Virus record (IMG/VR): IMGVR_UViG_3300037110_000087
Location: 243,125 to 307,124 of that record
Length of the DNA: 64,000 nucleotides
Reading direction: 5' to 3' (one strand)
Numbering within the stretch: position 1 is the first letter of the stretch; every line of letters starts with the position of its first letter. Under the pieces are notes generated by a model. The model had not been told where the DNA came from and searched no databases. It was given only the letters and a program-made list of their open reading frames with translations. Positions 416-55,279 of this stretch are shown here, piece by piece. Made by a program: the position numbers and the translations under genes.

Positions 416-967
416 CTAACCCTGTTCTACTTTAACCATGACTTTCGCTCTGGCTTTATCAATAATCTGTTGGAACTTATCATAGAGATGTGCCCTTGGA
501 CTCATTGGTAATCTGACCAATATCAATCCAGCTTCTTCCACTGTTTTGTTACCCTTCTTTTGATTGTGGATCCGGCAGCATGCCACCAGATTCTTCCAAG
601 TGGAGCTTCCTCCACGACTACTTGGGATCAGATGGTCCAGGGTATTCCCGGTTCGGGTACATTGTAATCCAGTGGTTTCATCAATATACTGACATTTATA
701 ATCATCTCTTCTCAAGATACTGCGTGATCCATCACCAAGAAGTTTAACTTCAGGGACCGCAGCGACCTGATGGTAGACAATAATCTCAAATGGTTTGAGA
801 ATGTCTTCTAGTTTGTTTGAGGTAGAAAAGTCATAGGGATTTAAGATAACCGCTCTACCATTGATTATTGCCTTAACACAATGATACCGGCCCAATTCAC
901 AGATAGGAAGGTAGTTTCGATCTAGAGCTATGATTGGGGATCGTTTATGAAATTTTCCCTTGTGCAT
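416..967 (-). CDS. HNH endonuclease
   Basis: CQY...TLDHLIPSSRGG.STWKNLVACCRIHNQKKG motif. Confidence 0.9.
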   Translation of the reverse strand: MHKGKFHKRSPIIALDRNYLPICELGRYHCVKAIINGRAVILNPYDFSTSNKLEDILKPFEIIVYHQVAAVPEVKLLGDGSRSILRRDDYKCQYIDETTGLQCTRTGNTLDHLIPSSRGGSSTWKNLVACCRIHNQKKGNKTVEEAGLILVRLPMSPRAHLYDKFQQIIDKARAKVMVKVEQG

Positions 968-1700: not shown

Positions 1701-2420
1701 CTAACCAGGGATAATTTCAAGGAACTTATCAAACAACATTGGGATCTTCGACTGGAGCTGTTTAAAGTATTCGTTACTAACGACTCTCATATCAGGATGA
1801 GCAGTCTTAGGTAATCTAAGTCCAAAGAAATTTCTCAGACTGCGAATATTCATCGTTACCACGAATTCCGTCTTCAGCCCATTGGGAAGAATATCTCTGG
1901 CTTCTTGAGGAGTAAGGCCGTATTCACCTTCTTTATCCACCCAATCGCAGTAGGTCTGTAGACAACCCCACTGCTGCATATACCATTCGCGCTTGAATTT
2001 GTCAGATTTATCATTGATCCAAGCCGGGTAAACAATGGACCCAGCCTTCTTCAGATAGTTCACATAACGAGTGCTTTCCTGAGTATAAGCTGCGATCCGA
2101 TGGCGAACCCATTCGTGACTGACCCCACGATTTGTGGTAACTAGTGCAGTAATACTGACATGTTCAAGAGTGGATTCATGTCCATTTGACAAGATAATAT
2201 TAAGGATCTTCTCATAAGAAGTATCATTAATATTATCTTCGCTCTTATAGGCAACCCGGATGATACGTTCCAGTTTCTTTAGGATTTTGATCCCGTCGAT
2301 TCGTTCACCCAAGAATTTGGTATCTACCTTGGGCAACACAATATCCGCATCACCATCAAAAACTCCGGAACGCTTGTCTCTCCGTAAACTTTCCTTCAAG
2401 TCATTCAAGTCAACTAGCAT
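1701..2420 (-). CDS. thyX: FAD-dependent thymidylate synthase
   Basis: GHESTLEH, RGVSHEWVRHR, QESTRYV, EARDILP, NIRSLRNF motifs. Confidence 0.95.
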   Translation of the reverse strand: MLVDLNDLKESLRRDKRSGVFDGDADIVLPKVDTKFLGERIDGIKILKKLERIIRVAYKSEDNINDTSYEKILNIILSNGHESTLEHVSITALVTTNRGVSHEWVRHRIAAYTQESTRYVNYLKKAGSIVYPAWINDKSDKFKREWYMQQWGCLQTYCDWVDKEGEYGLTPQEARDILPNGLKTEFVVTMNIRSLRNFFGLRLPKTAHPDMRVVSNEYFKQLQSKIPMLFDKFLEIIPG

Positions 2421-2848: not shown

Positions 2849-4894
2849 TTATTCACTCTCGTTGATCGCGGCGAACAAGGCTCCCTTAGCGATGGTATTA
2901 AGGGGATCATCAGCCATGACAATCTTGTTGCCGGTCAAGAAGGAAATCTCCCTGGTAGCAGCGATCTTCTGAAATAGTTCCTTGAATCCCTTGGGAATCG
3001 CAGTACCACCAGCGATAGCGATCACAGGGGTATCAATCTCAGGCTTCTCTTCCATCCCATTCCAGGCAGCCGCGATCTGATCAAGCACGTAACCAATGAG
3101 ATGCGTGTAATAGTGGACAACCGCTTCCTGAACGTTGTCCTTGGGGTTCAGGAGATCCGTAGTTTCCTTAGCGCTCATAGCTTTGAGGACGCTCACATTT
3201 ACGGCTCTGGCAACATTTTCATCAATGTAGTCACCGGAGGCCGCGATACTGAAGGATAGCTTTGGCATTTCTTTGCCGAAGACCGCACCACTGACATTCA
3301 TCATACCCGCACCGCAGTTATGGACGCAGACACCAGGAAGAGAAAACGAAGGGTCATTCTCAACTGATAAATCATATACCCATCCGGTGTATTCTTCTTG
3401 CTTTACAGACTTGATCTTATTAAGTCTGTAACCACCAATTCTCTTATGTAGCTCTGAACCAATCGGACTGTCCAGAAGTGACTGAAGCATCCGTTTATTC
3501 GATCCGGTTACAACTACCTCATATACGGTCTTTTTTCCAGAGATCTGTCTTCCCCTGATTAATCCATCATTCCTCGGTTTTCTAGATTTAAATCTAGAAC
3601 TAATTCCCAGGATTCCCAAGGCTTGATGTAAGAAGACCGACAGATCAGAACTAGTGTTGGAAAACGAAATGGTTTCTTGCCCAAAACATCCATCGCTGTT
3701 CAACAGACCATTAACAATCCCAGTAAGAACAGGCAGACTGAGACTTTCGACCTTAAATGGAACCACTTTATTGCCACTATGATAGCAGTGGTTCAAAAGC
3801 CAGCGTGAAAGACCCGCGTAACCCATAGTCAGTCGGATATTATTCCTGTTTCCTCTACTGATCTGAGAAATTTCTCTATCGAAAACAGAACAAGACATCT
3901 TGTAATCTTCCACAAGATCTTGTTCATTTGGACCAAGATCAAGAATTACTGAAGTTTCCCTGGTATCGATATGCCCATCACCAAGGAAATATCCAAGAAA
4001 TTTGCCCAGATTGTAAGACATTTCGAATGTCTTATTGAACTGCTTCCCATTACCAATTCTATCTTTAAAACTGATGAAATTCCTTTTCTGATTGTGATTG
4101 ATTACTGGTTCGCCCACGACATCATCTTTTTTCAGGGAATCCACTCTTTTCCATTTCCAGGACCCACCTTCCAGGACATCTACAAGATGATCTCCAGTCA
4201 GACAAAGTTCTCTACCAGCAATCTTTAGTTTGTAGATTAACTCAGACCGTCCGGTTCTTGTGGTCTTATACACCTGATTCCAAGAACCATTTTTGCTAAG
4301 AACCAAGTCCCCTTCCTCAATGTCCTCAATGTCCTTAACGCCCCCATTGCAGAAGACTTCCTGACCAGGAAGAAGGCAGCTGATGCCAATGCCGGTTAGG
4401 TTCTCATCCAGTAGTTCACTATAGATGACGCAAAGACCCTCACGGAGCGCTACCGGTCTGTAACCAAGCTCAGTAAGCATTTTCTTGAAGACCGCTTCAT
4501 GATAGACCGCATTGAATTCCGCATCCACCGGGTTAGCAGGGACACTGAAATAAAGCAGTTCATTCGGTTCCGCAGGATCACCCAGGACCTGTTTGATGAT
4601 AGCTAGCATGATAGGGGTAGCATTCGGGTCATGAGGATTCAATACGCCCTTAGCCATGGGCCGCTTTGGAGACTGATTAAACGCCTTGGCCAACTGCATG
4701 GCCTCTTCACCCAGGGCGTAAATCTTTCCGTTCATCTGAACGTAAGGAACACCAGCCTTCTTGAGCATACTTAGCACGAGTGGATTTCTATCCAATTCCA
4801 CATACATATTACGAACACGGTTGAAGATGTATTCGTCGTCTTTCATGATTGCCCCGACGACACCGCCGGTACCAATGTCAAGACCCTTTGCCAT
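2849..4894 (-). CDS. actin-fold ATPase (MreB/FtsA/ParM-like) containing an intein
   Basis: N-terminal GLDIGTG (phosphate 1), FSVPA, GIGIS|CGAGMMNV after splicing (phosphate 2), IAGGTAIPKGF (adenosine), DPLNTIAKGAL; 327 aa after intein removal. Confidence 0.85.
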   Translation of the reverse strand: MAKGLDIGTGGVVGAIMKDDEYIFNRVRNMYVELDRNPLVLSMLKKAGVPYVQMNGKIYALGEEAMQLAKAFNQSPKRPMAKGVLNPHDPNATPIMLAIIKQVLGDPAEPNELLYFSVPANPVDAEFNAVYHEAVFKKMLTELGYRPVALREGLCVIYSELLDENLTGIGISCLLPGQEVFCNGGVKDIEDIEEGDLVLSKNGSWNQVYKTTRTGRSELIYKLKIAGRELCLTGDHLVDVLEGGSWKWKRVDSLKKDDVVGEPVINHNQKRNFISFKDRIGNGKQFNKTFEMSYNLGKFLGYFLGDGHIDTRETSVILDLGPNEQDLVEDYKMSCSVFDREISQISRGNRNNIRLTMGYAGLSRWLLNHCYHSGNKVVPFKVESLSLPVLTGIVNGLLNSDGCFGQETISFSNTSSDLSVFLHQALGILGISSRFKSRKPRNDGLIRGRQISGKKTVYEVVVTGSNKRMLQSLLDSPIGSELHKRIGGYRLNKIKSVKQEEYTGWVYDLSVENDPSFSLPGVCVHNCGAGMMNVSGAVFGKEMPKLSFSIAASGDYIDENVARAVNVSVLKAMSAKETTDLLNPKDNVQEAVVHYYTHLIGYVLDQIAAAWNGMEEKPEIDTPVIAIAGGTAIPKGFKELFQKIAATREISFLTGNKIVMADDPLNTIAKGALFAAINESE
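3317..4378 (-). mobile_element. intein (354 aa) with LAGLIDADG homing endonuclease
   Basis: Starts CLLPGQEV (Cys1); block B LTGDH; LGYFLGDG and GLLNSDG LAGLIDADG motifs; VYDLSVENDPSF...VHN end followed by Cys+1. Confidence 0.93.
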
Positions 4895-4913
4895 TTAATT
4901 CTCCTCGAAAAAA

Positions 4914-5222
4914 TTAGAACTCGATTTCATGTCCACCGCAAACGCCACAGATAGAATCATCCCGGCCCATTTCGAACCCATCTCCAGCGAAAGATCTCAG
5001 GGGAAGCCTGACCTCAAGGGTTCGCCCAGAAGTAATTTCGCCCAGCACTCCATCACCGAAGGTATCAGCGATTTCCTGGCATTTATCAGGATATTTCTTA
5101 AGCAAAGACATCCATGACAGCATGCTCATGGTTACAAATTCGACTCTGTAACCACCTCTATCGTAGGCATCCGCCTTAGCGATGATTTCATTGGGGCCAT
5201 ATTTTACTTCAAACTGATCCAT
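4914..5222 (-). CDS. hypothetical protein
   Basis: ORF directly upstream of actin-like gene. Confidence 0.65.
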   Translation of the reverse strand: MDQFEVKYGPNEIIAKADAYDRGGYRVEFVTMSMLSWMSLLKKYPDKCQEIADTFGDGVLGEITSGRTLEVRLPLRSFAGDGFEMGRDDSICGVCGGHEIEF

Positions 5223-5679
5223 TTGGTTCTCCTTTGGATTTTTTAAACTTAGCTTTGAGATCTGCTGCGGACATTCCCTTCTGTTTCGAACTGTCTACTT
5301 TAATATCACTCTCACTAACAGGTTCGAAACTCGGAACAAATACATCACCCGATGGTCCAGAAGGTTTAACCTCTGGTGTGGCTCCCACTACTACCACCTG
5401 CTGTGGCGGAGTGGCCTTAAGTGCACGAATCTCCTCCATCATTTTGGTCTGCATGATCAGCAGTTGTTCCATCATATTATTATCAGCTGGGATCTCAGGA
5501 GCATCTGGAATAAAATCAAACCTATAGATATTATTTAGTTCCTGCCAACCTTTGGGCAAAGAATTAACCGCAACGACAACAGAGTCACCAGGATTAAGAT
5601 AACTGCTAGCGAACCAGCAAGCTATCCCGCCTCCCTTTTGCACCTGATGGCTTATATTGGTTACTCTTACTTGTGTCAT
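5209..5679 (-). CDS. hypothetical protein with low-complexity C-terminus
   Basis: ORF in run; Pro/Val-rich linker and basic tail. Confidence 0.7.
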   Translation of the reverse strand: MTQVRVTNISHQVQKGGGIACWFASSYLNPGDSVVVAVNSLPKGWQELNNIYRFDFIPDAPEIPADNNMMEQLLIMQTKMMEEIRALKATPPQQVVVVGATPEVKPSGPSGDVFVPSFEPVSESDIKVDSSKQKGMSAADLKAKFKKSKGEPNGSV

Positions 5680-6915: not shown

Positions 6916-8421
6916 CTATCGTGTGATATACCTTGGCAAAAAGCTGACTAAATTAGTGAAGAAATTGTCCGGAATTCTTGGATTAGTTACTTCTGGCCGA
7001 ACACCATATTCCTCGATATTATGTCCGGTAAAAATCCTCGCCTTGGACGTAGGGAGTACGCTTCGTAGAGCATGCAGAAGGTCATCCCCTGTTACCCCAA
7101 AGAATTTTTGTGCAGCCAAACTCCGATCCTTCCAGGTCTTGGCAAATTCTTCAAACTCAGGGTTGTCCACTCGATACATGACCGTGTTCACCAGTTCCAT
7201 TTCGAGCGGAGATAGGACCGCTTCCAGGCTGACAAACAAGGCGGATTCCTGAAGTCGTTCATCGTTCACTTCCAGATTCATCGATTTGGAAGGATCAATA
7301 TCCGGGTTGTCCAGCATGGGCAGTTCAGTGACTTCATGGGAAGTGACTTCCCCCTTACCTCTGCTCTTTCCATTGCCGCAATTCATGCAGAAGACGACAC
7401 CTTCATCATCTTCGCGAGAAATTTCCTGACCTGCCTCATTATACCTGATAGTGACGGTCGGTCTGCGCCTTCCAAAACCAGTTCCGTCACAGGCAGGACA
7501 GATGACCGACCTCGATTCCTGCCGCTTGTGACCATTTTCATATTCAACAGCCACGTGATGCATCTGGCTTTTCATGTTGTTCTGCGCCAGCTTCATAGAT
7601 TCGATAGGATCTTCACGATGACTGGTCTTGAGGATGGCTACCCAGGCTTTCTCAGACAGGACATGGGTCAGGACTTCAGTATCCTCGTAGACGTCCCTCA
7701 GACATTTGAAGATCGGTTTCATCACGATCCGCTTGGCGTATTTGAAAATCATGGGATATAATTCCCTGTACCGCTCCATTTCGTCAATCACGATACCGTC
7801 GCGCCAGCTTTCTTCGCATTCAGCTGGGCCAAACTGAGGGACCACCCGCTGCAAATACCACTCGTGCAGCTGTTTCAATTCAGCCCGGTCCACTTCAAAT
7901 TTCTGCGCTGCGAAGGTATAGGAGTTCTCCCACTCTTTGGGAGTGAGGGTCTTTTCTCTCCATACTTCCGACAAGACACGATTGGTGGAGTCATCCTCTT
8001 CATCAGGGATGATATCCACGGTAGTATCCACGGTGACTCGATTAACGATCCGATTCTGATAAATCACATTGAAGAGAGCGCGACTCATCCGAGTCCAGGA
8101 TACATCGAATTTGCAAGCATCCTTAAAAAGTCGATATTCGTCATACCACACATCTGCAGCGATCTTACCAGATTCCAAGATATTCTGGTTATCTCCTTTG
8201 ACCTTCTCGCAGTCCTGGTGCGTGACCTTCCCACTGCCATGCCGCAGGAGGCTATGGGAGATGGCCCGATCAAGGAGAACGACGAAAATGCGGTTGTTCT
8301 TCAACAGCACTTCTGATTCATTCATGAATTTCTTGATGCCGCTCAGAATGGTGTAGCCTCTTCCAGGCTTCGAAGGAACAAAGCGCTGAGGAACGTCAAG
8401 GTTGAAGAGTTGATTTCTCAT
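6916..8421 (-). CDS. large hypothetical protein with DnaJ-type zinc finger
   Basis: CPACDGTG and CMNCGNG CxxCxGxG-like pair. Confidence 0.75.
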   Translation of the reverse strand: MRNQLFNLDVPQRFVPSKPGRGYTILSGIKKFMNESEVLLKNNRIFVVLLDRAISHSLLRHGSGKVTHQDCEKVKGDNQNILESGKIAADVWYDEYRLFKDACKFDVSWTRMSRALFNVIYQNRIVNRVTVDTTVDIIPDEEDDSTNRVLSEVWREKTLTPKEWENSYTFAAQKFEVDRAELKQLHEWYLQRVVPQFGPAECEESWRDGIVIDEMERYRELYPMIFKYAKRIVMKPIFKCLRDVYEDTEVLTHVLSEKAWVAILKTSHREDPIESMKLAQNNMKSQMHHVAVEYENGHKRQESRSVICPACDGTGFGRRRPTVTIRYNEAGQEISREDDEGVVFCMNCGNGKSRGKGEVTSHEVTELPMLDNPDIDPSKSMNLEVNDERLQESALFVSLEAVLSPLEMELVNTVMYRVDNPEFEEFAKTWKDRSLAAQKFFGVTGDDLLHALRSVLPTSKARIFTGHNIEEYGVRPEVTNPRIPDNFFTNLVSFLPRYITR

Positions 8422-8430
8422 GATCCCTCG

Positions 8431-9036
8431 TTAAGTTTTGGATTGTGGTCCAAATAGTTCGTACAGGCTTTTCTTGATCTGCTTGTCGACAATCCTCAAA
8501 CCCTCCAATTTGACTCGCCAAGCTGTCAAAATCTCGTGGCAGTAATCTTCGGTATCAGAACCTTGAGTCTTGGCAATCGTTCGCCAGTCAATATCCTCGC
8601 GTAACTCTACCTCAACGAACCGTCCCAATGTATTTCCAAACTTGTCTAACACAGTGTACCATGCAAGAACCACAGACGCAAGATAGTAGATGTGACTGAT
8701 CTTACTGATATTCATCACTTCTACGAAATTAAGCATCTCAAACATTTCTTTGACTTCTGTCGGAGAGGGATTTTTCAGTCTGATATTTATTTCTTTGCGG
8801 ACCTCATTACCATGAATCTTCTTCTTAGTAGTCAATTCACCAAAATGACTACTAAATCGATGACGGATGGTATCTCCATCAGCATTACGGTAATAAATAT
8901 CTACACCAGATCCCATCTGGTAAGATCCCTTACCAGAAGCGCCTAATTCATCAAAACGACGCAGTGACATTTCAATGTCAGAGCTAACAGTGAATTTAAC
9001 CTCCCTCTCCCGAAGCTCCACGCTGTTTAGATCCAT
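8431..9036 (-). CDS. CYTH (triphosphate tunnel) domain protein
   Basis: EREVKF, DIYY, IRHR, ELTTK, RKEINI, KISHIY, FVEVE motif series. Confidence 0.8.
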   Translation of the reverse strand: MDLNSVELREREVKFTVSSDIEMSLRRFDELGASGKGSYQMGSGVDIYYRNADGDTIRHRFSSHFGELTTKKKIHGNEVRKEINIRLKNPSPTEVKEMFEMLNFVEVMNISKISHIYYLASVVLAWYTVLDKFGNTLGRFVEVELREDIDWRTIAKTQGSDTEDYCHEILTAWRVKLEGLRIVDKQIKKSLYELFGPQSKT

Positions 9037-10013
9037 TTCTGCTCCAATGCTCTCATAGCCTTCATCTTCTTCCTTTCCAGAAAAACTTCAGAGGGCAGAT
9101 AAACCCATCTTAAGATTGAATCAACTCTCTGAGTTGCGATGTAGTAGAAATCTTTGTCCTTCTTCTTATGAATTATTGGATGAAGGGGCAGCAGTTCAAC
9201 AATTTGTTCAATAAATCCAAGAGATGCTGATCCGAAACTAAACGTCCATCTGCCTTTACTCTCCGAGATACACCCATCCCCCTCAATGCAACCCCGGATG
9301 AAATCTCTCTGATATTGTTCTGGTATTTTATCCAGAACTATTTTCAAGCCAGAGGTCTTCCGGGGTACAATCCCATAAGATCGCAGGCTATCATTTAGAT
9401 GATCGGAATAGACGCACCAGCTAGTGGTTTTGAGACGCTCGTTTGATCTACAGGTCCCACCAATGAAGCTATGAAACGATTCAGTGATCTCTTTGTCCTT
9501 AATATTCAGGGAAAGCGTAACCCCACGTTGACCCCTTCGAGTTCCTTTGTCTCTGACACATCCGTCTGTGGCCATCCATCCCAAGGCCCATGCTTTTTCA
9601 GCGCAGTCGATTATATCAAACCAATACTCGTTAACTGGATTTTTCTCTTTTGCCAACTCACTTATAGATTTAATAGGCATCTTTAGTTCATTCAGCCTGT
9701 TTGTGATTGCAATCTGGCTGATACCAATGGTATTGGATATACCCTTTATGCTCTGACCTTTACTATAGAGATCAGAGATCAGATTACTTTGACGACTAAT
9801 TTCCTCAATTCTTTGCTCTGACCTTGACTGGACACCCGCCTTCTTTACGTGGCCCGCTACTGTCTGGCTAGACACACCAAATTCCCGTCCCAGGATGCTC
9901 GGTGATTCCCCATTCACATATCTTTCGACGATTTGGTTAATCTGATCTTTTGATAGCACAATCACACTCCCTGAATTCAGTTTATCACCGAGTCCAAGGA
10001 GTGTGTTTTGCAT
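9027..10013 (-). mobile_element. free-standing LAGLIDADG homing endonuclease with N-terminal HTH repeats
   Basis: AWALGWMATDGC and FIRGCIEGDGCI motifs; IDCAEKA lead-in. Confidence 0.88.
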
Positions 10014-20387: not shown

Positions 20388-21236
20388 ATGAAAGTTTATT
20401 GGCACTTGAGTGACAAAATTGGTAGCATGACTCCAAAATGGTTGAATACTTTCCGTGAGGAGCTTGATGTCACTGGAGAGCAGCAGGGATTCATTGGTGA
20501 TCACTCTCTCCTGCCTTTGGATTTTGAACCTGAGGTGGTGATTTCATTAGGTGGTGATGGGACCATGCTTAGTGCCATGCGTAGGACCTATCATATGCAC
20601 ATTCCCTATTTTGGAATCAACTTTGGTGGGATGGGATTTCTTAGCCCTCATGATCCTAATCAGCATGCAATGTATGCAAGTGGTCTTAAAGAATATATCG
20701 CTTCACCTAAAGTAATTGGGCAAATGGACCATACAAAGATGATCAAGGAGGTCTTCCAGGGGTCTTACTGTCGTCTTGATACCAAGGATACTTTCCCCCC
20801 TTTCTTCAATGACTGCGTGATTACTAATGAAAATCGTGGTCAGGCTTGCCGTTTCGGATTGAAGATTGATGGGTCTGATTTTGGGACCATCACCGGGGAT
20901 GGCTTGATTATTTCGACTCCAATGGGGTCCACTGCTTATTCATTGAGCGCTGGAGCTTCAATCTGTGATCCTTCACTATCGGCAATTATTATAACCCCTA
21001 TCTGTCCTCATTCCCTTAGTTTCCGTCCTTTATTCGTGAGTAATGATCGAGGAGTGGAGATTTTAATTAAGAGTGATGGATTTATGTATCTTGATGGTCG
21101 GAAGGAAACTCCCGTGTATTCTGGACAGATTCTTAAAATAGGATCCGCCACTATCCCAGTGAGAATTCTTAAGTTTGGTGAACCCCATCTCTATTTCAAT
21201 ACTCTCCATTCCAAACTTGGCTGGGTTGTTGGATAA
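20388..21236 (+). CDS. nadK: NAD kinase
   Basis: SLGGDGTML, GINFGGMGFL, ND, GDGLIISTPMGSTAYSLSAG, TPICPHSL. Confidence 0.93.
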   Translation: MKVYWHLSDKIGSMTPKWLNTFREELDVTGEQQGFIGDHSLLPLDFEPEVVISLGGDGTMLSAMRRTYHMHIPYFGINFGGMGFLSPHDPNQHAMYASGLKEYIASPKVIGQMDHTKMIKEVFQGSYCRLDTKDTFPPFFNDCVITNENRGQACRFGLKIDGSDFGTITGDGLIISTPMGSTAYSLSAGASICDPSLSAIIITPICPHSLSFRPLFVSNDRGVEILIKSDGFMYLDGRKETPVYSGQILKIGSATIPVRILKFGEPHLYFNTLHSKLGWVVG

Positions 21237-21421
21237 TGCCTTTATTTGATTATGAATGTGGATGCGGTCACCGGACAGAAGTGTTGGTTCCTTCTCCGGA
21301 TGTTAAAGAGATTGAGTGTCCTCTATGTCAATGTATCGCACGACAGAAGTTTCCAATAAGTACACCGATTTTTGTCGGTGATGGTTGGTTTAAAGATGGA
21401 TATGCCAAGAAGGGGAAGTAA
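21236..21421 (+). CDS. FmdB-family zinc-ribbon protein
   Basis: MPLFDYECGCGH...CPLC...F.GDGWFK.GY. Confidence 0.8.
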   Translation: MPLFDYECGCGHRTEVLVPSPDVKEIECPLCQCIARQKFPISTPIFVGDGWFKDGYAKKGK

Positions 21422-22599
21422 TGTTGGGAGTACAGAAATACCTGCGTTGTGGAAAGACCATCGAGAACCTCTGTGCTGAATTCAGTATCAAGGCTAGAGT
21501 TGATCCAGCACTTGGTGTAGTCAGCCTAAATTATGACCAAATCAATTCTGTGATGAGCCTTCAGATTGTCCAGGAATGTCGCGCTCTGATTCTTGAGCTT
21601 GATACCTGGGAAGTTCTATCCTGGCCTTTCAAGAAGTTCTTTAACTATGGTGAGGGTCATATTCCAGAGGATTTCGATTGGGGCAGCTTCTCTACTCTGG
21701 AAAAGCTCGATGGCTCCCTAATTTCTCTGTGGTTCAAGAAAGTGAGTGATACACCTGGACCTCTTTATCAGGCTTATTTTTCTACCAGAAGCGTTCCAGA
21801 TGCAAACTGCGGTTACGATGAAAGTGGTGATACCTTTTTGAGTTTGATCAAGAAGACCATCGTCGAAATGGAAGCCAAGTATGGAAATTATAAGGGAGAG
21901 TTCCTCAATCATTTCATGACAGGTTATTCCTATGCATTTGAATTGACTACTCCAGAAAATCAGATCGTCGTTCAGCACAATGAACGCTGCTTGACCCTCA
22001 TTGGAGTGAGGGATCTTGAAACTCTAGAAGAAGTAGACATCTATGAATGGGCTAGGGATACCTACCCATATCCAGTCGTAAAGGGTGTCATGGGACTTAA
22101 TTTAGAGGCAGTGAAGCAAAAGGTGAGTGAAATCAATCCTCTTGATGAAGAAGGATATGTGCTCATCGACGAGAATTTCAATCGAATCAAGATCAAGAGC
22201 GATGCTTATCTCCTGCTGTCTCGTTCACGTGACAACCTGGGTAAATCCGCTCGTGCCCGGTTGGAAATTATCTTAATAGATAAAATGGATGATGTCTGGC
22301 CGATCCAGCCCAAATGGATTCAAGAAAAATTAACCAGCATGAAAGAGGCTATCCGAACTCTAGCTCTTTATATCGATCTTCAGTATGTGCAGGTTTGTGA
22401 TATTGAAGGCCAGAAAGATTTTGCTCTGGAGATCAAGGGTTTACCCTACAAGGATGCTTTGTTCCAGCTGAGGAGCAAGAAGGTGGAATCCGCGATAGAC
22501 TGGGTGAGAAACTATGGACTCAAGAATTCCCGTAAACTTCTTGATTTGTTGAAAATTGTAGTGGAGGATCTTGATGACCAAGAGTCTGAAGAGAGTTAG
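21421..22599 (+). CDS. T4 Rnl1-like RNA ligase
   Basis: CRALIL, WPFKKFFN, EKLDGS (motif I), FEL..PEN.IV, EGYV, RIKIK. Confidence 0.9.
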   Translation: MLGVQKYLRCGKTIENLCAEFSIKARVDPALGVVSLNYDQINSVMSLQIVQECRALILELDTWEVLSWPFKKFFNYGEGHIPEDFDWGSFSTLEKLDGSLISLWFKKVSDTPGPLYQAYFSTRSVPDANCGYDESGDTFLSLIKKTIVEMEAKYGNYKGEFLNHFMTGYSYAFELTTPENQIVVQHNERCLTLIGVRDLETLEEVDIYEWARDTYPYPVVKGVMGLNLEAVKQKVSEINPLDEEGYVLIDENFNRIKIKSDAYLLLSRSRDNLGKSARARLEIILIDKMDDVWPIQPKWIQEKLTSMKEAIRTLALYIDLQYVQVCDIEGQKDFALEIKGLPYKDALFQLRSKKVESAIDWVRNYGLKNSRKLLDLLKIVVEDLDDQESEES

Positions 22600-22677
22600 C
22601 GCACCCGTACCCGTAGAAATGGAAACTGACCGGGTGATCACAGAGATTATTTGCAGGATGGTAATTAAGGGAAAGAA

Positions 22678-23193
22678 ATGAGGACTAGCGATAGTCATCC
22701 TATTGAGGTTAGTTGGCTCCCCTACCTTAATATAGGTTTGACTTTTTGTCCGGGTAAGAAACAAACAAATTCTATGACCGGTGGTTGGGATCGTGATATT
22801 GATAAGGACCTTGACCGATTGAAGGGTTATTATGGAGTAGACCGTATCATTTGTCTGATGGAATCTGAGGAGTTGGAAGAATATGGGATCCCAAACTATT
22901 TTGCAAAAATTGAAGAACACGGTATGCATTGGATTCACCTCCCTTTTCCTAATGACACCTGCCCTCCAGATGCAAGTGCGTTTGTTAGTATTGGCAGGTA
23001 TTTAAATCTTGAAAAGATAACGACTGTCATTCATTGTAAAGGTGGTATTGGTCGGACAGCAATGTTAGCGGCAGTCTGTTTATCGTTCAATAAACACATC
23101 TGTATTGAAAAAGCTCTAGAGGAAATTTCTGAAATAAGACAGGTCATTCTAACGCCAGAACAGCGTAAATGGATGTTGAATAATTTTATGTAA
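22678..23193 (+). CDS. Cys-based (CDKN3/dual-specificity-like) phosphatase
   Basis: IHCKGGIGRT CX5R motif. Confidence 0.88.
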   Translation: MRTSDSHPIEVSWLPYLNIGLTFCPGKKQTNSMTGGWDRDIDKDLDRLKGYYGVDRIICLMESEELEEYGIPNYFAKIEEHGMHWIHLPFPNDTCPPDASAFVSIGRYLNLEKITTVIHCKGGIGRTAMLAAVCLSFNKHICIEKALEEISEIRQVILTPEQRKWMLNNFM

Positions 23194-23239
23194 ACAGGGA
23201 TCCAGGGAGGATCTTTGCGGAATCGACCATGGAGGTCAA

Positions 23240-24343
23240 ATGTACAAAGCTATCGTTTATATTGGAAGATTTCAACCACTCCACAATGAACATTTGCAAA
23301 CTATGAAAGAAGGTCTGCAACTGGCGGAGAATCTGGTAATTGTGTTAGGTTCTTCCTATTGTCCCAGGAACGATTATAATCCATGGAACGAAGATGAACG
23401 TGAAACAATGATCATGGGCAGTCTCTCAAAGGAAGATCGATCAAGAATCTTTTTCATTAAGGCCAGGGATACCAAATACAATGACTCTCTGTGGGTTAAC
23501 ACAATTCACAGTGAATTGACTAAGATCCTGGCCGAACAAGAAATAAAAGATTCGAAATTCCCAACTATTCGATATCCAGCCTATGAGGGCCTTCCCGCTC
23601 AAGGAGTTGCTATCATTGGTTACGCGAAAGATAGCAGTTCTTATTATCTCCATATGTTCCCACAGTGGGACTTCATTGAACGTGTTGATCAAAAAACCAA
23701 ATGCTTCAGCGCTTCGGAGTGTCGGAAGAAATATTTTGTGGACTTAAGGGATAAAGAAGTCGCTGGGTCTGCGATCTCGGAGTTGCTGAATGTTCCCCAA
23801 CATGTAGGAGACTTCCTGGGATTTTGGAAGAACACAGACGCGTATAATTACGTGGTCAAGGAGCTTGAATTCCAGCAGAAATATACGGAACAATGGGAGA
23901 AGGCACCTTATAAGCCGATTTTCGTCACCACGGATGCGGTTGTGATTAAGAGCTTTCATGTCTTGATGGTAAGGCGCAAGAACAACCCAGGGAAGGGACT
24001 CTTAGCTCTTCCCGGTGGATTCCTTGATGCCACTGAAACCATTGTTGATTCAACCATCAGAGAAGTCAGGGAAGAGACCACTATTCAAATCAGTGCGGAG
24101 CAACTGAAAACCTACGTGAAGCAAACTAAGGAATTTGCTCATCCCTTCCGATCTAGACGGGGAAGGACCATCACGTTTGCTTCTTTGATTGCATTAGGCA
24201 ATGGTGTGTTACCCAGTGTGAGGGGTCGTGATGATGCAGCTGAGGCTCTGTGGATTCCTCTGAGTGAGATCCATGATCTCCGTTCTCAGATGTTTGAAGA
24301 TCATTATGACATCATCTGTAATCTTGTAGGAATCATGGAGTAA
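23240..24343 (+). CDS. bifunctional NMN adenylyltransferase / ADP-ribose pyrophosphatase (NadM-Nudix)
   Basis: YIGRFQPLHNEH; Nudix box PGGFLD..E......REVREET; GRDDA. Confidence 0.93.
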   Translation: MYKAIVYIGRFQPLHNEHLQTMKEGLQLAENLVIVLGSSYCPRNDYNPWNEDERETMIMGSLSKEDRSRIFFIKARDTKYNDSLWVNTIHSELTKILAEQEIKDSKFPTIRYPAYEGLPAQGVAIIGYAKDSSSYYLHMFPQWDFIERVDQKTKCFSASECRKKYFVDLRDKEVAGSAISELLNVPQHVGDFLGFWKNTDAYNYVVKELEFQQKYTEQWEKAPYKPIFVTTDAVVIKSFHVLMVRRKNNPGKGLLALPGGFLDATETIVDSTIREVREETTIQISAEQLKTYVKQTKEFAHPFRSRRGRTITFASLIALGNGVLPSVRGRDDAAEALWIPLSEIHDLRSQMFEDHYDIICNLVGIME

Positions 24344-24486
24344 CTATGGACAACAAACTGAGCTTTGAGGAATGGTGGGAACAGCTTCAGAAAGAGGTCT
24401 ATGCCGACATAGACCCAAAAGAATTGGCTCGTGACGCCTTTGAAGCTGGCTCAAGTTATTGTTACTACAATATCAACAGGTGAAAT

Positions 24487-24885
24487 ATGAAAGAAATTTC
24501 AAGATCTGCAACAGGTCGTTTTCCCTCTGATATTCCTAATCAGAGCAATGTACCCAAGACAGACGAAGGACAGACCTTTCTCAGTTCGTTCAAAGCTGGC
24601 TATCCAGAGGTAAGACTTTCTTTCGAAAACTTGGAAGAGCGTGTCATCCGGACCCTTAGTATTCCTGTCGAGCAGATTGATCGTAATAACAATTGGTTCT
24701 CTCAGGAAGCCTTTGAGAAGGCTATGATCCCACTTGAGGACAGTAATTATATCTTCCCAGTTACTGACAAAGACGGAGTTGTTACATTTCATGAATTCCA
24801 GGGTGTAACATTCACCCATTGCCGTACCACTTTTACTGACTCTCATAGAGTCTCGCCAGAAACCATTCAAGAGGAGAAATCTTGA
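24487..24885 (+). CDS. hypothetical protein
   Basis: ORF in plus run. Confidence 0.55.
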   Translation: MKEISRSATGRFPSDIPNQSNVPKTDEGQTFLSSFKAGYPEVRLSFENLEERVIRTLSIPVEQIDRNNNWFSQEAFEKAMIPLEDSNYIFPVTDKDGVVTFHEFQGVTFTHCRTTFTDSHRVSPETIQEEKS

Positions 24886-25199
24886 AACCAACTACTAAGG
24901 CCACCAACCCAGCCACCACATCCGTTAAGGAGAAAGCGGCTACTGCTACTCTGCTCGATGTAGCTCCGTTCAAGGGGGTTATTGACACTTTTGCGAAAGC
25001 CGGGAATTCCTCCTTCGCGATCCTGATCCCCGCCACGTGGTTCATGGAATTGGATGGGGTCAAGGGGGTGAAACTCAATCGCGAAGCTGCCTACCTGGGC
25101 ACCTTGTTTAACAAGGATGTCTATGACACCGATCTGAATCAGATCGAGATCCGGTATACTCGTCCGGATGGCACCAGAGGCATCGAGGTCTATAAGTGA
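24882..25199 (+). CDS. hypothetical protein
   Basis: AGGAG RBS, TTG start overlapping upstream stop. Confidence 0.65.
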   Translation: MKPTTKATNPATTSVKEKAATATLLDVAPFKGVIDTFAKAGNSSFAILIPATWFMELDGVKGVKLNREAAYLGTLFNKDVYDTDLNQIEIRYTRPDGTRGIEVYK

Positions 25200-25419
25200 C
25201 ATGGGCTTCCTTATTGGCTTCTTCGTCTATGTGATCATGATGAGTGCGGTTATGTTCCCGATTAGAGACATGATTACGGACCCTGTTTCCAAAGACATGG
25301 GTCCGATCAGGTTCCGAATGTATCCACTTTGGGTCTATGTCATCTTCGCACCTGTAGTGCTATTAGCCATAATTTTTAATCTTTTGTGGATGTTGCTCGT
25401 TGTGGAGTTGTGGAAGTGA
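25168..25419 (+). CDS. small membrane protein (true start likely MGFLIG)
   Basis: Two hydrophobic segments. Confidence 0.55.
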   Translation: MAPEASRSISDMGFLIGFFVYVIMMSAVMFPIRDMITDPVSKDMGPIRFRMYPLWVYVIFAPVVLLAIIFNLLWMLLVVELWK

Positions 25420-25685
25420 TTGAAGGTTGGATTTCCCTAGTACTCGCAACAATTTTCATGTTGCGAGTACTAGTTATGTTCCTATTCTACCGCAGATTTA
25501 CAATCCACCTTGCAAGCGGAGAATCAATTAAGATTGTTTGTACTTACTTTGCCCTTTCTTATAATGAGAGCGGGACAGTAACCGGTTGGCAGATGTCAAG
25601 AAAAGATAATGGGAAGACGTTGATTTATGCAAATCCTGCTCTCATTATCGCTGTCACTGACGAACTTCCTTATATTTGGGACTAA
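25386..25685 (+). CDS. membrane-anchored hypothetical protein
   Basis: One TM segment then a beta-rich domain. Confidence 0.55.
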   Translation: MDVARCGVVEVIEGWISLVLATIFMLRVLVMFLFYRRFTIHLASGESIKIVCTYFALSYNESGTVTGWQMSRKDNGKTLIYANPALIIAVTDELPYIWD

Positions 25686-25750
25686 GAGGGTTATAATAAA
25701 AGTAGACTCAGGGAGAGTCTACAACTAAATCGATCCAGGGAGGATCACAA

Positions 25751-27127
25751 ATGTCAAATCTTTCTAATTCAATTATCGATGTCGACTCATACAAGTTAAG
25801 CCATTTCAACATGTATCCGGATGAGACTCAAAAGGTCTACAGCTATTTCGAATGTAGAAATGGTGCGACCTATTCGAACCAGAAATTCTTCGGCCTTCAG
25901 TATCTCCTCAGGACCCAGTTGGTGAACCCGGTTACTCAGGAAGATCTAGAGGAAGCCTACGAGATCAGCAAGGAGCAGGGTTTGCCTCTCAACTATGCTG
26001 GTTGGCAGTACATCCTTGATGTCCATGATGGGATGTTGCCTCTTCATATCAAGGCTATCCCCGAGGGAATGGTCCTGCCAGTGTCCAATGCATTAATTAC
26101 CATCGAGAACACGGATACTAACCTACCCTGGCTCACCAATTATGTGGAGACTATGTTGTCCCGTATTTGGTACCCTATCACTATCGCGACCATGAGTCAT
26201 GAGGCGAAGAAGGTTATCAGTTACTTCAACGAGCAGACTGCTGACAATCCCGGTCTGGTCCCATTCCAACTGCATGACTTCGGTTCTCGTGGAGTAACCT
26301 GCCCTGAACAGGCTGCAATTGGAGGAATGGCTCACCTCACAAACTTTTATGGCACTGACACAGTTATTGCTCACCTGATGGTTAAAAAGATATATGGGTC
26401 TAAAAACCCTATTAGTTTTTCCGTGAACGCGACTGAACATAGTATCCAGACTTCCAAGGGCCGAGGAGGTGAGAAACAAATATTTGTGGATCTCCTTCAT
26501 AAATATCCAACAGGAATCCTCAGCGTGGTCATTGATTCTTATGACTATCAGAATTTTATTTCCGGTTATGGACTCGAATTTAAGGAAGAAATCCTTGCCC
26601 GAAATGGCAAGCTGGTCTTCCGCCCCGATTCTGGTGACCCAGTTGCCGTGAGTCTCGATGTGATCTCTCGTCTGGATCGGGTCTTCGGCTCTACCATCAA
26701 CACCAAGGGCTACAAAGTTCTTCATCCCCAGGTTGGAATGCTTTGGGGTGATGGCATCGACATCGAGGACATGGAAGTCATTCTGCAGAATCTCAAGAAT
26801 AATGGTTGGTCTTCGGACAATATTGTCTTCGGGATGGGTGGTGGACTGCTTCAGAAGGTCAACCGTGATACCATGCGGTGTGCTTTCAAGTGCAGTGCAC
26901 AGTTGCAGAACGGTAAATGGGTCGATATTTCCAAGGACCCGCTTGACTCGACCAAGAAGTCAAAGAAGGGTCGGCTCAAGGTAATCGAGACTCCCGATGG
27001 GATCATCACTGTCAATCAGAATGACGAGCGATACACCGACAGTGAAGATCTGTTGCAGACGGTGTTCCTCAATGGCGAGATCACGAAGACCTACACTCTG
27101 GATGATATTAGGGAAAGGAACTGGTGA
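25751..27127 (+). CDS. nadV: nicotinamide phosphoribosyltransferase (NAMPT)
   Basis: DVDSYKLSH, LHDFGSRG, ATEHS, SVVIDSYD, VFRPDSGDP, WGDGI, FGMGGGLLQKVNRDT, KKSKKGRL. Confidence 0.95.
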   Translation: MSNLSNSIIDVDSYKLSHFNMYPDETQKVYSYFECRNGATYSNQKFFGLQYLLRTQLVNPVTQEDLEEAYEISKEQGLPLNYAGWQYILDVHDGMLPLHIKAIPEGMVLPVSNALITIENTDTNLPWLTNYVETMLSRIWYPITIATMSHEAKKVISYFNEQTADNPGLVPFQLHDFGSRGVTCPEQAAIGGMAHLTNFYGTDTVIAHLMVKKIYGSKNPISFSVNATEHSIQTSKGRGGEKQIFVDLLHKYPTGILSVVIDSYDYQNFISGYGLEFKEEILARNGKLVFRPDSGDPVAVSLDVISRLDRVFGSTINTKGYKVLHPQVGMLWGDGIDIEDMEVILQNLKNNGWSSDNIVFGMGGGLLQKVNRDTMRCAFKCSAQLQNGKWVDISKDPLDSTKKSKKGRLKVIETPDGIITVNQNDERYTDSEDLLQTVFLNGEITKTYTLDDIRERNW

Positions 27128-51595: not shown

Positions 51596-53194
51596 ATGTC
51601 CATCAATAACCGTAGAACTACTCCCCTAGTTCCCTCTGCCATCGCTGTGGCCCAGGCTACCGCCCACAAGAATCATATGGCTGGCAATAGCTGGGAAATT
51701 ACCCCTATCACCCGTCTGAAGTGCATGGCGAGTTCCTGCTTCTTCGGAGAGCCGACCTATTACAACCCCAAAGTGGCTAGCTATGGCCACTTCTACGAGG
51801 GCAGCTTTCTGGGCCAGACCATGTTTGGCAAGGAATGGCATGGTTTAAATCCTGCGCAGAAGTTGGAGAAGGCGATCGATGAGGCCCTCGATTATGATGC
51901 TGAGGCGACTCTCGATTACGCTTTCGAACTGCGTACTCAGTTGAACATCCGTGCCACCCCTCAGGTGATCGCGGTCCGTGCGGCTAATATGGTTTCCCTC
52001 AAGGGTCAGGGAATCCGCCAGTATGCACTGGCTACCATTCAGCGTCCAGATGATGCTGCCACTCAGTTCGCCTACCATGTCGCCAAGTATGGCAAGAACG
52101 CTCCCATTCCCAACGCTCTCAAGAAGGCGTGGCGTGAGTATCTGATCAAGTGCACCGAATATGACTTGGCCAAATACCAGCTGGCCAGCAAGGAAGTCAA
52201 GATGGTCGACCTAATCAATATGGTCCGGCCCAAGAGCGAAGCTATCGACAAGTTCATGAAGGGCACCCTGTCCAACACCGGCAAGACCTGGGAAGCCATC
52301 ATCAGTGGTGGTGGCAGGTGGGATGAAGCGGTTGAAGTGATGGGTCACATGGCTCTGCTGCGCAATTTGCGCAACTTCGTCGAGAAGAGTGATGAAACCA
52401 CTCAGCGTAAGGTTGCTGACAAGCTGGTTGCTACTGCAGCCAAGGGTCATCAGCTGCCTTTCCGCTACTGGTCTGCCTTTAACGCCCTAGTCGAAGGTGG
52501 ACGGAGAGCACCCGGTTTCATGCTGGATGCAGTCGAGAATGCCCTGCGTGTCTCTCTGGGCAATCTACCCCGATTGCAGGGTAACAGCCTAGTGCTGTCG
52601 GACAATTCCGGTAGCGCTCGTCATGCCTTCCAGAGCAAAATGGGTTCAGTCCAGATCTCCACCATCGGTAACCTGCTGGCTGCGATCGTCGGCAAGATCT
52701 CCGATAATGCCAGAATTGGGGTATTCGGTGACCGGCTGTCCTGTGTCGAATCCCGTAAGTCCAGTTCGGTGTTCGATGACCTGAAGACTCTGAATAACCT
52801 AGGCGAAGGAGTCGGCCAGGGAACTGAGAATGGCATCTGGCTGGCGCTCCATCAGGCTATCGCGGAACGCGAACATTGGGATAATATCTTCGTCTGCAGC
52901 GATATGCAAGCCGGTCATGGTGGGCTTTATGGTTGTGGCGTCATCCCCAGCGAATACCTGTGGCGTACCAACAACCAGGGCTATGGTGCGGCCAGCAGCC
53001 CGGTCACCATTGATGTTCCTTACATGCTGCACAAGTACCGGAAGATCAATCCCAATGTCAACGTGTTCCTGATCCAGACCGCTGGATACGAGGACACCAT
53101 CATCCCTGAATACTTCGATCGCACCTACGTGATCGGGGGATGGAGTGATGGGGTGATCCACTTCGCTGATCAGATGATCAAGCTGCGTCAATGA
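51596..53194 (+). CDS. Ro60/Rsr TROVE-vWA RNA-binding protein
   Basis: N.MAGNSW, FFGEPTYY, R..LNIR..P, IQRPDD, MALLRNLRN, QLPFRY..A, VLSDNSGS MIDAS, SDMQ. Confidence 0.9.
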   Translation: MSINNRRTTPLVPSAIAVAQATAHKNHMAGNSWEITPITRLKCMASSCFFGEPTYYNPKVASYGHFYEGSFLGQTMFGKEWHGLNPAQKLEKAIDEALDYDAEATLDYAFELRTQLNIRATPQVIAVRAANMVSLKGQGIRQYALATIQRPDDAATQFAYHVAKYGKNAPIPNALKKAWREYLIKCTEYDLAKYQLASKEVKMVDLINMVRPKSEAIDKFMKGTLSNTGKTWEAIISGGGRWDEAVEVMGHMALLRNLRNFVEKSDETTQRKVADKLVATAAKGHQLPFRYWSAFNALVEGGRRAPGFMLDAVENALRVSLGNLPRLQGNSLVLSDNSGSARHAFQSKMGSVQISTIGNLLAAIVGKISDNARIGVFGDRLSCVESRKSSSVFDDLKTLNNLGEGVGQGTENGIWLALHQAIAEREHWDNIFVCSDMQAGHGGLYGCGVIPSEYLWRTNNQGYGAASSPVTIDVPYMLHKYRKINPNVNVFLIQTAGYEDTIIPEYFDRTYVIGGWSDGVIHFADQMIKLRQ

Positions 53195-54589: not shown

Positions 54590-54960
54590 CTGTTTCCCCA
54601 CACGCTGCAAGACAATCTGTAAAGGTTAATGGTAAAATAAAGATTCATTAAGGGCAAATTTTCATGATCAACTCTCTACCCAAACAATATTGCATGCCAA
54701 ATTCCATTGAATTTGGTCGTGGAATGCTTGTGTAAAGGGTCTTTCTGAATCTTTTTATGGAAAAGGCCCCTCGTCAAACAGGGGCCTCAACATTTCCGAC
54801 CCTGGTTCCTTAGATTAGTCCGCACAAATCGCAGAGCTACGAACTCTGAGAACGCCAGTTGAAATCTGGCAGGAACCACCACTGGAGCAAGTTGGATCAA
54901 ACAACTAGAAGTTAGAATAGATCCAAGGCAACAATCAAGGTTGAAGCCAAACAGAAGGGA

Positions 54961-54989
54961 TTGACAGAAACGAACAGTCAGGTTAAAAT
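54961..54989 (+). promoter_or_regulatory. sigma70-type promoter heading the ncRNA field
   Basis: TTGACA-17-TAAAAT. Confidence 0.8.
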
Positions 54990-55174
54990 AAAAGACAACC
55001 AACGTGATCATGGTCATATTGGGAATCCTTGGAAAATCAATAGCGTAATAAGTTTGTCGGGCGTTTTAGGACGCCTGAATGGTCCCACATCCTACGCGGA
55101 AGTGGGCAAGTCCATCGAGGCTGTATCCTCCTGTCGTGAGATAACGGGGCTAGTGGATTCAACAGCAAATATCA

Positions 55175-55279
55175 CCAACAGTAGTGATCGGAACGGTTAC
55201 TTCCCTACCAAACAAGAGAAAAACGGGTTCGCCCGTTGTCGTGGGTAAAACCACTCTCCGTTCCCCCTTTCTCTGTTGG
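55175..55279 (+). ncRNA. Y-RNA-like (Yrl-type) RNA, reduced core, copy 1
   Basis: CCAACAG/CTGTTGG outer stem, bulged nt, GGAACGG/CCGTTCC inner stem, GGTTACTTC motif, pyrimidine-rich 3' strand. Confidence 0.65.

What the first reader, a model, noticed from the sequence alone, without database searches (positions are those of the whole stretch)
2849..4894. Intein inserted in the phosphate-2 loop of a phage actin-like ATPase
Seen: a 354-aa Cys...His-Asn intein with two LAGLIDADG motifs splits GIGIS|CGAG, leaving a 327-aa actin-fold protein. Known: inteins favour nucleotide-binding motifs, mostly in replication and repair enzymes. Inference: a cytoskeletal-type host protein would be an unusual intein site.
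Basis: partly seen in the sequence, partly recalled or inferred. Interest (0 to 1): 0.65.

Follow-up and report, generated by a model that had tools for sequence, protein, structure and literature searches.

The report
Intein splitting a jumbo-phage actin homologue
A 307-kb peat phage encodes an actin-like ATPase whose ATP-binding loop is interrupted by a complete self-splicing intein with a homing endonuclease; no paper I could search reports this host protein class, yet related uncultured phages often carry inteins at this spot.

Summary
ORF 2849..4894 (-) encodes 681 aa: a 172-aa N-extein, a 354-aa intein and a 155-aa C-extein.

- **Exteins:** they match Pfam Volactin (PF25216) positions 1-172 and 174-321 of 321. 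They keep all 11 invariant family residues.
- **Intein:** it has Cys1, TxxH, two LAGLIDADG motifs with both Asp, His-Asn and Cys+1. Its model matches solved intein endonucleases.
- **Site:** the split is in the family counterpart of MamK's DIGAGTTD, the phosphate-2 motif.

"Unusual" is only half right. I found no paper describing an intein in an actin-fold protein. In sequence space, however, this family is an intein hot spot. About 19 of the 150 closest cluster representatives carry inteins, at six positions within about 25 residues. They belong to two lineages, one with LAGLIDADG and one with HNH endonucleases, and include mini-inteins. The seven such loci I inspected (this record included) look phage-like. 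A natural with/without pair exists, with exteins 75-85% identical.

Verdict: a canonical, probably active mobile intein in a new host family, the volactin-like actins of jumbo phages. Splicing, cleavage and filament formation are inferred, not shown.

The parts
2849..4894 (-). Whole precursor gene: 681 aa plus stop codon (2849-2851)
4901..4906 (-). GAGGAG ribosome-binding site, 6 nt upstream of the ATG
   Evidence: read from the sequence
4379..4894 (-). N-extein, aa 1-172; Volactin profile positions 1-172
   Evidence: 163.8 bits
4856..4885 (-). Phosphate-1 motif GLDIGTGGVV (family-conserved D6, G8, T9)
4379..4396 (-). N-terminal half of the phosphate-2 motif (TGIGIS); ends at the splice junction
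3317..4378 (-). Intein, 354 aa (protein aa 173-526). GC 0.41 against 0.49-0.51 in the exteins
4340..4378 (-). Intein block A, starting with the nucleophile Cys1 (CLLPGQEVFCNGG)
   Evidence: (C1 invariant)
4181..4207 (-). Intein block B with TxxH (LCLTGDHLV); T61 nearly invariant and H64 invariant among relatives
3971..4009 (-). LAGLIDADG motif 1 (LGKFLGYFLGDGH), catalytic Asp134
3686..3727 (-). LAGLIDADG motif 2 (LTGIVNGLLNSDGC), catalytic Asp229
3317..3385 (-). Intein blocks F and G (GWVYDLSVENDPSFSL, PGVCVHN), ending in His353-Asn354
2852..3316 (-). C-extein, aa 527-681, starting with the +1 nucleophile Cys527; Volactin profile positions 174-321
   Evidence: 80.3 bits
3293..3316 (-). C-terminal half of the phosphate-2 motif (CGAGMMNV)
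2984..3022 (-). Adenosine-binding motif (IAIAGGTAIPKGF; family G276, G277)
5209..5679 (-). Upstream 156-aa ORF, a possible partner of the actin homologue (inference only). Its C-terminal tail resembles the genes upstream of the volactin gene in three other phages

Best explanation
The gene encodes a 681-aa precursor of a phage volactin-like (MreB/MamK-like) actin-fold ATPase, interrupted by a canonical class-1 intein that carries a LAGLIDADG homing endonuclease.

Splicing (inferred from the residues): Cys173 makes the N-S acyl shift. The thioester passes to Cys527. Asn526, helped by His525, cyclises and releases the intein. An S-N shift then joins Ser172 to Cys527. This restores the phosphate-2 beta-hairpin (GIGIS-CGAGMMNV) and yields a 327-aa ATPase.

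While the roughly 40-kDa insert sits in that hairpin, the precursor should be unable to bind or hydrolyse ATP normally. Function therefore depends on splicing.

At DNA level, the endonuclease domain is expected to cut intein-less alleles of related phages during co-infection and to copy the intein in by repair (homing).

The spliced protein most likely forms nucleotide-dependent filaments that position or segregate phage DNA or assembly sites. That last step is the weakest.
For: Shown by computation:
- The exteins are colinear with the Volactin profile across the insert.
- They keep 11 of 11 invariant and 17 of 18 nearly invariant family residues.
- Intein-free relatives read straight through the site: GISFGAGM in LR756511, LSYGSGM in LR745208, GFSHGAGM in P0002. 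Many have a native Cys there (GIGISCGGG).
- All splicing residues are present and are conserved in 15 relatives: C1, H64, H353 and N354 invariant, T61 in at least 90%.
- Both LAGLIDADG Asp residues are present.
- The AF2 model of the intein (pLDDT 89) matches the TliVMA intein, PI-SceI, PI-PkoII and PI-PfuI at E 1e-14 to 1e-17. Its core matches I-DmoI.
- The AF2 model of the intein-free relative P0002 (55% identical, pLDDT 97) matches MreB, MamK and BeeR. The family profile hits MamK at 9e-17 and aligns the site to DIGAGTTD.

Signs of mobility:
- The intein's GC is 0.41 (GC3 0.39) against 0.49-0.51 (GC3 0.54-0.59) in the exteins.
- There is a natural with/without pair in related phages, with exteins 85% and 75% identical.
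- Mini-inteins lacking the endonuclease sit at the same sites.
- A near-identical contig from a freshwater sample bridges the C-terminal junction.

Hints for function:
- Volactin itself forms dynamic filaments in Haloferax volcanii (PMC10869688).
- Four relatives are fused to ParB HTH domains and one to a ParA/MipZ ATPase.
Against: - No experiment shows splicing, DNA cleavage or polymerisation.
- The dimer prediction for the intein-free relative gave no answer.
- This family has Ser where actin, MreB and MamK have the phosphate-2 Asp, so its ATPase chemistry may differ.
- The closest same-site inteins are only 28-44% identical to this one, about as diverged as the exteins. Recent homing of this particular copy is therefore not shown.
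- No intein-less allele of this phage was seen, but read coverage was very thin.
- Gene neighbourhoods differ between phages: replication genes in some, tail genes in others. The cellular role is therefore uncertain.
Confidence: 0.87

Rival explanations
1. The intein is a domesticated conditional switch. Splicing is held back, for example by the redox state of Cys1, Cys10 or Cys+1, or by infection stage. The phage would then control after translation when its actin homologue becomes ATP-competent. This is compatible with the main explanation and adds a regulatory role to it.
For: - The insert lies in the catalytic phosphate-2 hairpin, so precursor and product should differ in an all-or-none way.
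- Cys1 and Cys+1 are both thiols, and a further Cys lies at intein residue 10.
- Inteins are kept at this loop in many diverged phages, including mini-inteins that have lost the endonuclease.
Against: - Nothing in the sequence requires regulation.
- Intact endonuclease motifs, a with/without polymorphism and deviant GC are what a purely selfish element predicts.
- Cys10 is not conserved among relatives.
Confidence: 0.1
2. The insert is a decayed, splicing-dead intein remnant and the gene is effectively inactivated.
For: Inteins do decay after fixation, and no close intein-less allele of this phage was recovered.
Against: - The 681-codon frame is open.
- Every splicing residue and both endonuclease Asp residues are intact.
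- The exteins keep all invariant family residues, which argues for continued selection on the ligated product.
Confidence: 0.04
3. The host protein is a non-polymerising actin-fold (ASKHA) ATPase, for example a chaperone-like or assembly factor of the virion module. It would then not be a cytoskeletal filament, and 'cytoskeletal host' would be a misnomer.
For: - In three other phage loci (L004 = LR745208, L006/L007, L015; the first and last are related) the gene sits beside a conserved 369-499 aa gene and a Zn-ribbon gene, with the tail sheath next in one of them.
- The phosphate-2 Asp is replaced by Ser.
- The dimer prediction gave no support (which is no evidence either way).
Against: - The best sequence and fold matches are all filament formers: volactin, MamK, BeeR and MreB.
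- ParB-HTH and ParA fusions in relatives point to DNA positioning.
Confidence: 0.2

Closest known systems
Class-1 inteins with LAGLIDADG homing endonucleases (PI-SceI/VMA1, TliVMA, PI-PfuI, PI-PkoII)
   Same: Cys1, TxxH, His-Asn and Cys+1. A Hint splicing domain with a two-motif LAGLIDADG domain inserted in it. Insertion in a nucleotide-binding loop of an essential-type ATPase. The predicted fold matches these structures at E 1e-14 to 1e-17.
   Different: - The host is an actin-fold ATPase, not a P-loop, replication or V-ATPase protein.
- Sequence identity to solved inteins is only 12-16%.
- At 354 aa it is compact, with no extra DNA-recognition region of the PI-SceI kind evident.
Volactin (HVO_2015, Pfam PF25216) of Haloferax volcanii
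   Same: The exteins score 238 bits on the family model against a cut-off of 35, over the full length. Volactin forms dynamic filaments in vivo (PMC10869688).
   Different: Phage-encoded, from a peat metagenome, and interrupted by an intein. No cell-shape role is expected in a phage. No filament data exist.
MamK, MreB and BeeR bacterial actins
   Same: Same fold in the model of the intein-free relative (TM about 0.7). The profile matches MamK at 9e-17, with the phosphate-2 motif aligned.
   Different: About 17% identity. Ser replaces the phosphate-2 Asp. The Pfam MreB_Mbl model does not hit the window protein.
Multi-site intein hot spots in DnaB, RNR and terminase (Novikova et al. 2016, PMC4760082)
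   Same: Several independent insertion points, a few residues apart, in nucleotide-binding motifs. Here there are six points within about 25 residues.
   Different: The host class is absent from that survey's main text (its supplementary tables were not searched) and from the 2025 actinobacteriophage survey of 19 host genes.
Phage and plasmid cytoskeletal systems: PhuZ tubulin of nucleus-forming jumbo phages, ParM/ParR
   Same: A mobile element encoding its own cytomotive-type NTPase. There is also a possible small upstream partner gene.
   Different: No tubulin is found in this genome. The partner relationship and the function are untested.

Membership tests
Intein (class 1, Hint superfamily) | N-terminal nucleophile (Cys/Ser) at intein residue 1 | tested here: met
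   Cys173 of the protein; C1 is invariant in 16 aligned relatives.
Intein (class 1, Hint superfamily) | Block B TxxH | tested here: met
   TGDH at intein residues 61-64. H64 is invariant and T61 is present in at least 90% of relatives.
Intein (class 1, Hint superfamily) | C-terminal His-Asn followed by a Cys/Ser/Thr +1 residue in the C-extein | tested here: met
   ...VCVHN|C; H353 and N354 are invariant.
Intein (class 1, Hint superfamily) | In-frame insertion in a host protein whose intein-less homologues are colinear across the site | tested here: met
   Volactin profile positions 1-172 and 174-321. Intein-free homologues exist in LR745208, LR756511 and P0002.
Intein (class 1, Hint superfamily) | Hint fold | tested here: met
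   The AF2 model (pLDDT 89) matches solved inteins at E about 1e-17. Pfam Intein_splicing is over its cut-off.
Intein (class 1, Hint superfamily) | Autocatalytic protein splicing | not testable with these tools
   Needs expression and detection of the products.
LAGLIDADG homing endonuclease | Two LAGLIDADG helices, each ending in a catalytic acidic residue | tested here: met
   ...FLGDGH (Asp134) and ...LNSDGC (Asp229). Each follows a helix in the model (H122-134, H215-229).
LAGLIDADG homing endonuclease | Site-specific cleavage of the intein-less allele | not testable with these tools
   Needs an in vitro cleavage assay.
Volactin family (PF25216), actin-fold ATPases | Score over Pfam's gathering cut-off along the full model | tested here: met
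   238 bits against a cut-off of 35. The N- and C-exteins scored separately give 164 and 80 bits.
Volactin family (PF25216), actin-fold ATPases | Actin-fold nucleotide motifs (phosphate 1, phosphate 2, adenosine) and the family's invariant residues | tested here: met
   11 of 11 invariant and 17 of 18 nearly invariant residues are kept. Note that the family has Ser, not Asp, in phosphate 2.
Volactin family (PF25216), actin-fold ATPases | Actin fold of the ligated protein | tested here: inconclusive
Shown for the natural intein-free relative P0002 (55% identical), which matches MreB, MamK and BeeR.
Volactin family (PF25216), actin-fold ATPases | Nucleotide-dependent filament formation | tested here: inconclusive
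   The dimer prediction for P0002 gave no answer. Filaments are known only for H. volcanii volactin.
MreB/Mbl (PF06723) | Match to the MreB_Mbl model | tested here: not met
   No MreB_Mbl hit at E up to 1 for the window protein. Only 9 of 52 long relatives hit it weakly.

The most novel reading that the evidence does not exclude
Jumbo and huge phages widely encode a volactin-like actin cytoskeleton. Its ATP-binding hairpin is a battleground for at least two intein lineages. In some phages, the obligatory splicing step has been co-opted as a post-translational timer or redox switch that sets when the phage filament system becomes active during infection.
Probability: 0.1. Interest if true: 0.8.

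Novelty: new member of a known kind. Interest (0 to 1): 0.5.

Why it matters
- **New host class.** It adds an actin-fold, cytoskeletal-type ATPase to the proteins known to host inteins. It also extends the rule that inteins target nucleotide-binding loops from P-loop and replication enzymes to the phosphate-2 hairpin of the actin fold.
- **A system for studying intein behaviour.** The family has six insertion points, two endonuclease types, mini-inteins and a natural with/without pair. This makes it a compact natural system for studying homing, site shifting and intein decay in uncultured jumbo phages.
- **An undescribed phage protein family.** The work exposes a broad family of phage-encoded actin homologues whose role in infection is unknown.
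- **A practical use.** A splicing-dead precursor would be a ready-made inactive control for studying such a filament.

Tried and rejected
- **DNA and single-protein searches:** a distant DNA search of the gene against GenBank phages found no match. A single-sequence scan of IMG/VR with the N-extein found nothing.
- **PHROGs:** no family for either extein. The intein only hits intein-bearing terminase families weakly.
- **Dimer prediction:** Complex prediction on two copies of the intein-free relative P0002 returned 'no answer', score 0.00. This is evidence neither for nor against polymerisation.
- **Reads:** other samples gave only short near-identical contigs. No joint skipping the intein was seen, but coverage is too thin to exclude an intein-less allele. 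Two contigs from an RNA library lie inside the intein, which does not prove transcription.
- **More inteins or a tubulin in this genome:** Intein_splicing, Hint_2 and LAGLIDADG_3 scans found only this intein plus one free-standing LAGLIDADG gene. No tubulin was found.
- **Neighbour comparisons:** the 131-aa and 102-aa neighbours do not match the neighbours in L014 and L008. Pfam finds nothing in the small neighbours.
- **Literature:** six searches combined intein terms with actin-like, MreB, ParM or ASKHA, or huge phages with actin. Two intein surveys were also read. None reports this host.
- the joined (spliced) extein was never built, typed or sent to any tool. The exteins were searched separately by reference, and the intein-free state was modelled on a natural relative.

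Full report
**Where the window lies.** The window is the last 64 kb of a 307,124-bp IMG/VR virus record that CheckV rates 98% complete. Its gene content is that of a jumbo phage. It has ThyX, an HNH endonuclease, NAD kinase, an NMNAT-Nudix fusion, NAMPT, RNA ligase, an SMC-like ATPase, a TROVE/Ro protein and six tRNA genes. The source is a peat metagenome. Near-identical fragments occur in freshwater, peat and permafrost runs.

**The observation.** ORF 2849..4894 on the minus strand gives 681 aa and is preceded by a GAGGAG ribosome-binding site.
- The N-extein is aa 1-172 (window 4379-4894) and ends TGIGIS.
- The intein is aa 173-526 (window 3317-4378, 354 aa) and runs from CLLPG to VCVHN.
- The C-extein is aa 527-681 (window 2852-3316) and starts CGAGMMNV.

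The two exteins were always searched separately by reference. The intein-free state was studied on natural intein-free relatives.

**The host protein.**
- Pfam places the exteins in Volactin (PF25216) at 238 bits against a cut-off of 35. The N-extein covers profile positions 1-172 and the C-extein covers 174-321 of 321, so the protein is colinear across the insert.
- An exhaustive HMMER search with the N-extein found 651 cluster representatives at E up to 1e-3. The closest intein-free one is P0002 (326 aa, 55% identity).
- I aligned 54 intein-free members (A1). Against that alignment, the window's exteins keep all 11 invariant and 17 of 18 nearly invariant residues. They abut without gap or overlap at family positions 173 and 174.
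- The family profile hits MamK (5JYG, 5LJV) at 9e-17, then BeeR, MreB and FtsA.
- The AF2 model of P0002 (pLDDT 97, pTM 0.94) matches MreB, MamK and BeeR at TM about 0.7.
- The Pfam MreB_Mbl model does not hit the window protein.
- It is therefore a volactin-like actin homologue, not an MreB.

**The site.** In the profile alignment to MamK, the family's 'GigiS-fGaGmvNvc' lies on MamK 'tiivD-IGAGTTDIC'. By established knowledge of the actin fold, that is the phosphate-2 motif. In the model, the split falls at the end of strand 169-174, just before the Gly-rich turn 175-178 of a beta-hairpin. The family has Ser where MamK and MreB have Asp. The +1 Cys is not a special adaptation, because many intein-free members read GIGISCGGG or GIGISCGAG.

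**The intein.**
- Pfam Intein_splicing (45.6 bits, cut-off 35.8) and LAGLIDADG_3 (40.2 bits, cut-off 22.5) are both over threshold.
- Block A (Cys1), block B (TGDH), both LAGLIDADG motifs with Asp134 and Asp229, block F, and block G ending His-Asn are all present. The Cys+1 follows.
- In an alignment with 15 relatives, C1, H64, D229, H353 and N354 are invariant. T61 and D134 are nearly so.
- The AF2 model (pLDDT 89) matches the TliVMA intein, PI-SceI, PI-PkoII and PI-PfuI at E 1e-14 to 1e-17. Its central domain matches I-DmoI.
- The intein is compositionally foreign. Its GC is 0.41 (GC3 0.39) against 0.49-0.51 (GC3 0.54-0.59) in the exteins.

**How common it is.**
- Among the 150 best representatives, I found inteins at six positions spanning family residues 173-198:

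| Site | Junction | Proteins |
|---|---|---|
| a | S\|C | This window, P0012, P0047, P0053, P0069, P0092, P0120, the mini-intein P0094, fragment P0096 |
| b | YG\|...\|SGM | P0093, mini-intein P0110 |
| c | GAGM\|C | P0018, P0046, P0116, P0138 |
| c2 | GMTN\|C | P0086 |
| c3 | GMVNS\|C | P0041 |
| d | SVAR\|C...\|GDWID | P0102, fragment P0114 |

- A Pfam scan of the 52 long hits finds Intein_splicing in 17, LAGLIDADG_3 in 9 and HNH_3 in 6.
- A tree of the inteins splits them into two lineages with 100/100 support. One is the LAGLIDADG lineage at sites a, b and d. The other is an HNH-type lineage at sites c, c2 and c3.
- The closest relatives of this intein found by word search (44-32% identity) all sit in Volactin-family hosts.
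- The intein-bearing members I could place lie on phage-like contigs. These carry a sheath gene, split PolIII-alpha with RecA, or YopX, and one contig is 234 kb long.
- None comes from a named isolate. IMG labels two of them 'intein/homing endonuclease'.
- A natural with/without pair exists. The volactin gene of huge phage LR745208 reads straight through GMTNCALA. P0086 has a 349-aa intein after GMTN. Their exteins are 85% and 75% identical, and the downstream gene is 62% identical.

**Literature.** I found no paper that reports an intein in an actin-like, MreB, ParM, ASKHA or volactin protein. The main text of the broad survey of Novikova et al. lists no such host; I did not search its supplementary tables (PMC4760082). 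Nor does the 2025 survey of about 800 actinobacteriophage inteins in 19 host genes. The searchable library is incomplete, and InBase was not available.

**Mechanism.** Splicing by the standard class-1 pathway, and homing by the LAGLIDADG domain, are inferred from intact residues and folds. Neither is shown. Because the insert splits the phosphate-2 hairpin, the precursor should be inactive until spliced.

**Likely role of the spliced protein.** The role suggested is a dynamic filament that positions DNA or assembly sites. It rests on three things:
- volactin's filaments in H. volcanii (PMC10869688);
- the filament-forming nearest structural relatives;
- ParB-HTH and ParA/MipZ fusions in cellular relatives.

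This is weak. Neighbourhoods vary between phages, and the dimer prediction gave no answer.

**Verdict.** The feature is real and precisely described. It is a canonical intein in a host class that appears to be unreported. It is recurrent rather than exceptional within that host family. I rate it a new member of a known kind, with interest 0.5.

Noticed in passing
window 5209..5679 (-); L004 2334..2957; L006 9306..9986; L015 877..1458: The gene just upstream of the volactin gene shares a weak but consistent architecture in four phages. It ends in a C-terminal tail of the form 'DVFIPS ... SES ... LKAxxKKS', about 38-41 aa from the end. Overall identity is 18-25%. It may be an adaptor or partner of the actin homologue.
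   Followed up: partly
L004 3995..5556; L006 12218..17352; L015 3716..5257: In other huge phages the volactin gene is followed by a conserved 369-499 aa gene (62% identical between L004 and L015) and a Zn_ribbon_8 gene. In L006 the tail sheath comes next. The actin homologue may therefore belong to a virion-assembly module there, unlike in this window.
   Followed up: partly
P0003-P0150 (relatives): Cellular relatives, from Planctomycetota MAGs and one Euryarchaeota MAG, carry long N-terminal extensions. Four are fused to a ParB HTH domain and one to a ParA/MipZ-type ATPase, which hints at a DNA-partition role for the family.
   Followed up: partly
window 9027..10013 (-): A free-standing 328-aa ORF with a LAGLIDADG_3 domain and N-terminal HTH domains. 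This is a second homing-endonuclease-type gene about 4 kb from the intein.
   Followed up: no
window 416..967 (-) and 1701..2420 (-): An HNH endonuclease gene lies two genes downstream of ThyX. ThyX here has no intein, although thymidylate synthase is a known intein host.
   Followed up: no
window 20388..27127 (+): An NAD module of NAD kinase, an NMNAT-Nudix fusion and NAMPT, with a T4-type RNA ligase in between.
   Followed up: no
window 51596..53194 (+) and 54804..63930: A TROVE/Ro-like protein gene is followed by a loose cluster of six tRNA genes: Arg-ACG, Pro-TGG, Ile-AAT, Cys-GCA, Phe-GAA and Ile-GAT.
   Followed up: no
L006 3199..5943 and 8005..9243: The related phage contig carries a second intein-bearing gene (914 aa, Intein_splicing) and an IS605 OrfB/TnpB-like gene just upstream of its intein-bearing volactin gene.
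   Followed up: no
window 14001-16000 and 48001-50000: Two GC-rich stretches (0.55-0.56) stand out against a window mean of 0.465.
   Followed up: no
window 3135-3353, 3799-3949, 4022-4172: A freshwater contig bridges the C-terminal splice junction with three third-codon-position A>G changes. Two identical 151-nt contigs from a permafrost RNA library lie inside the intein.
   Followed up: partly
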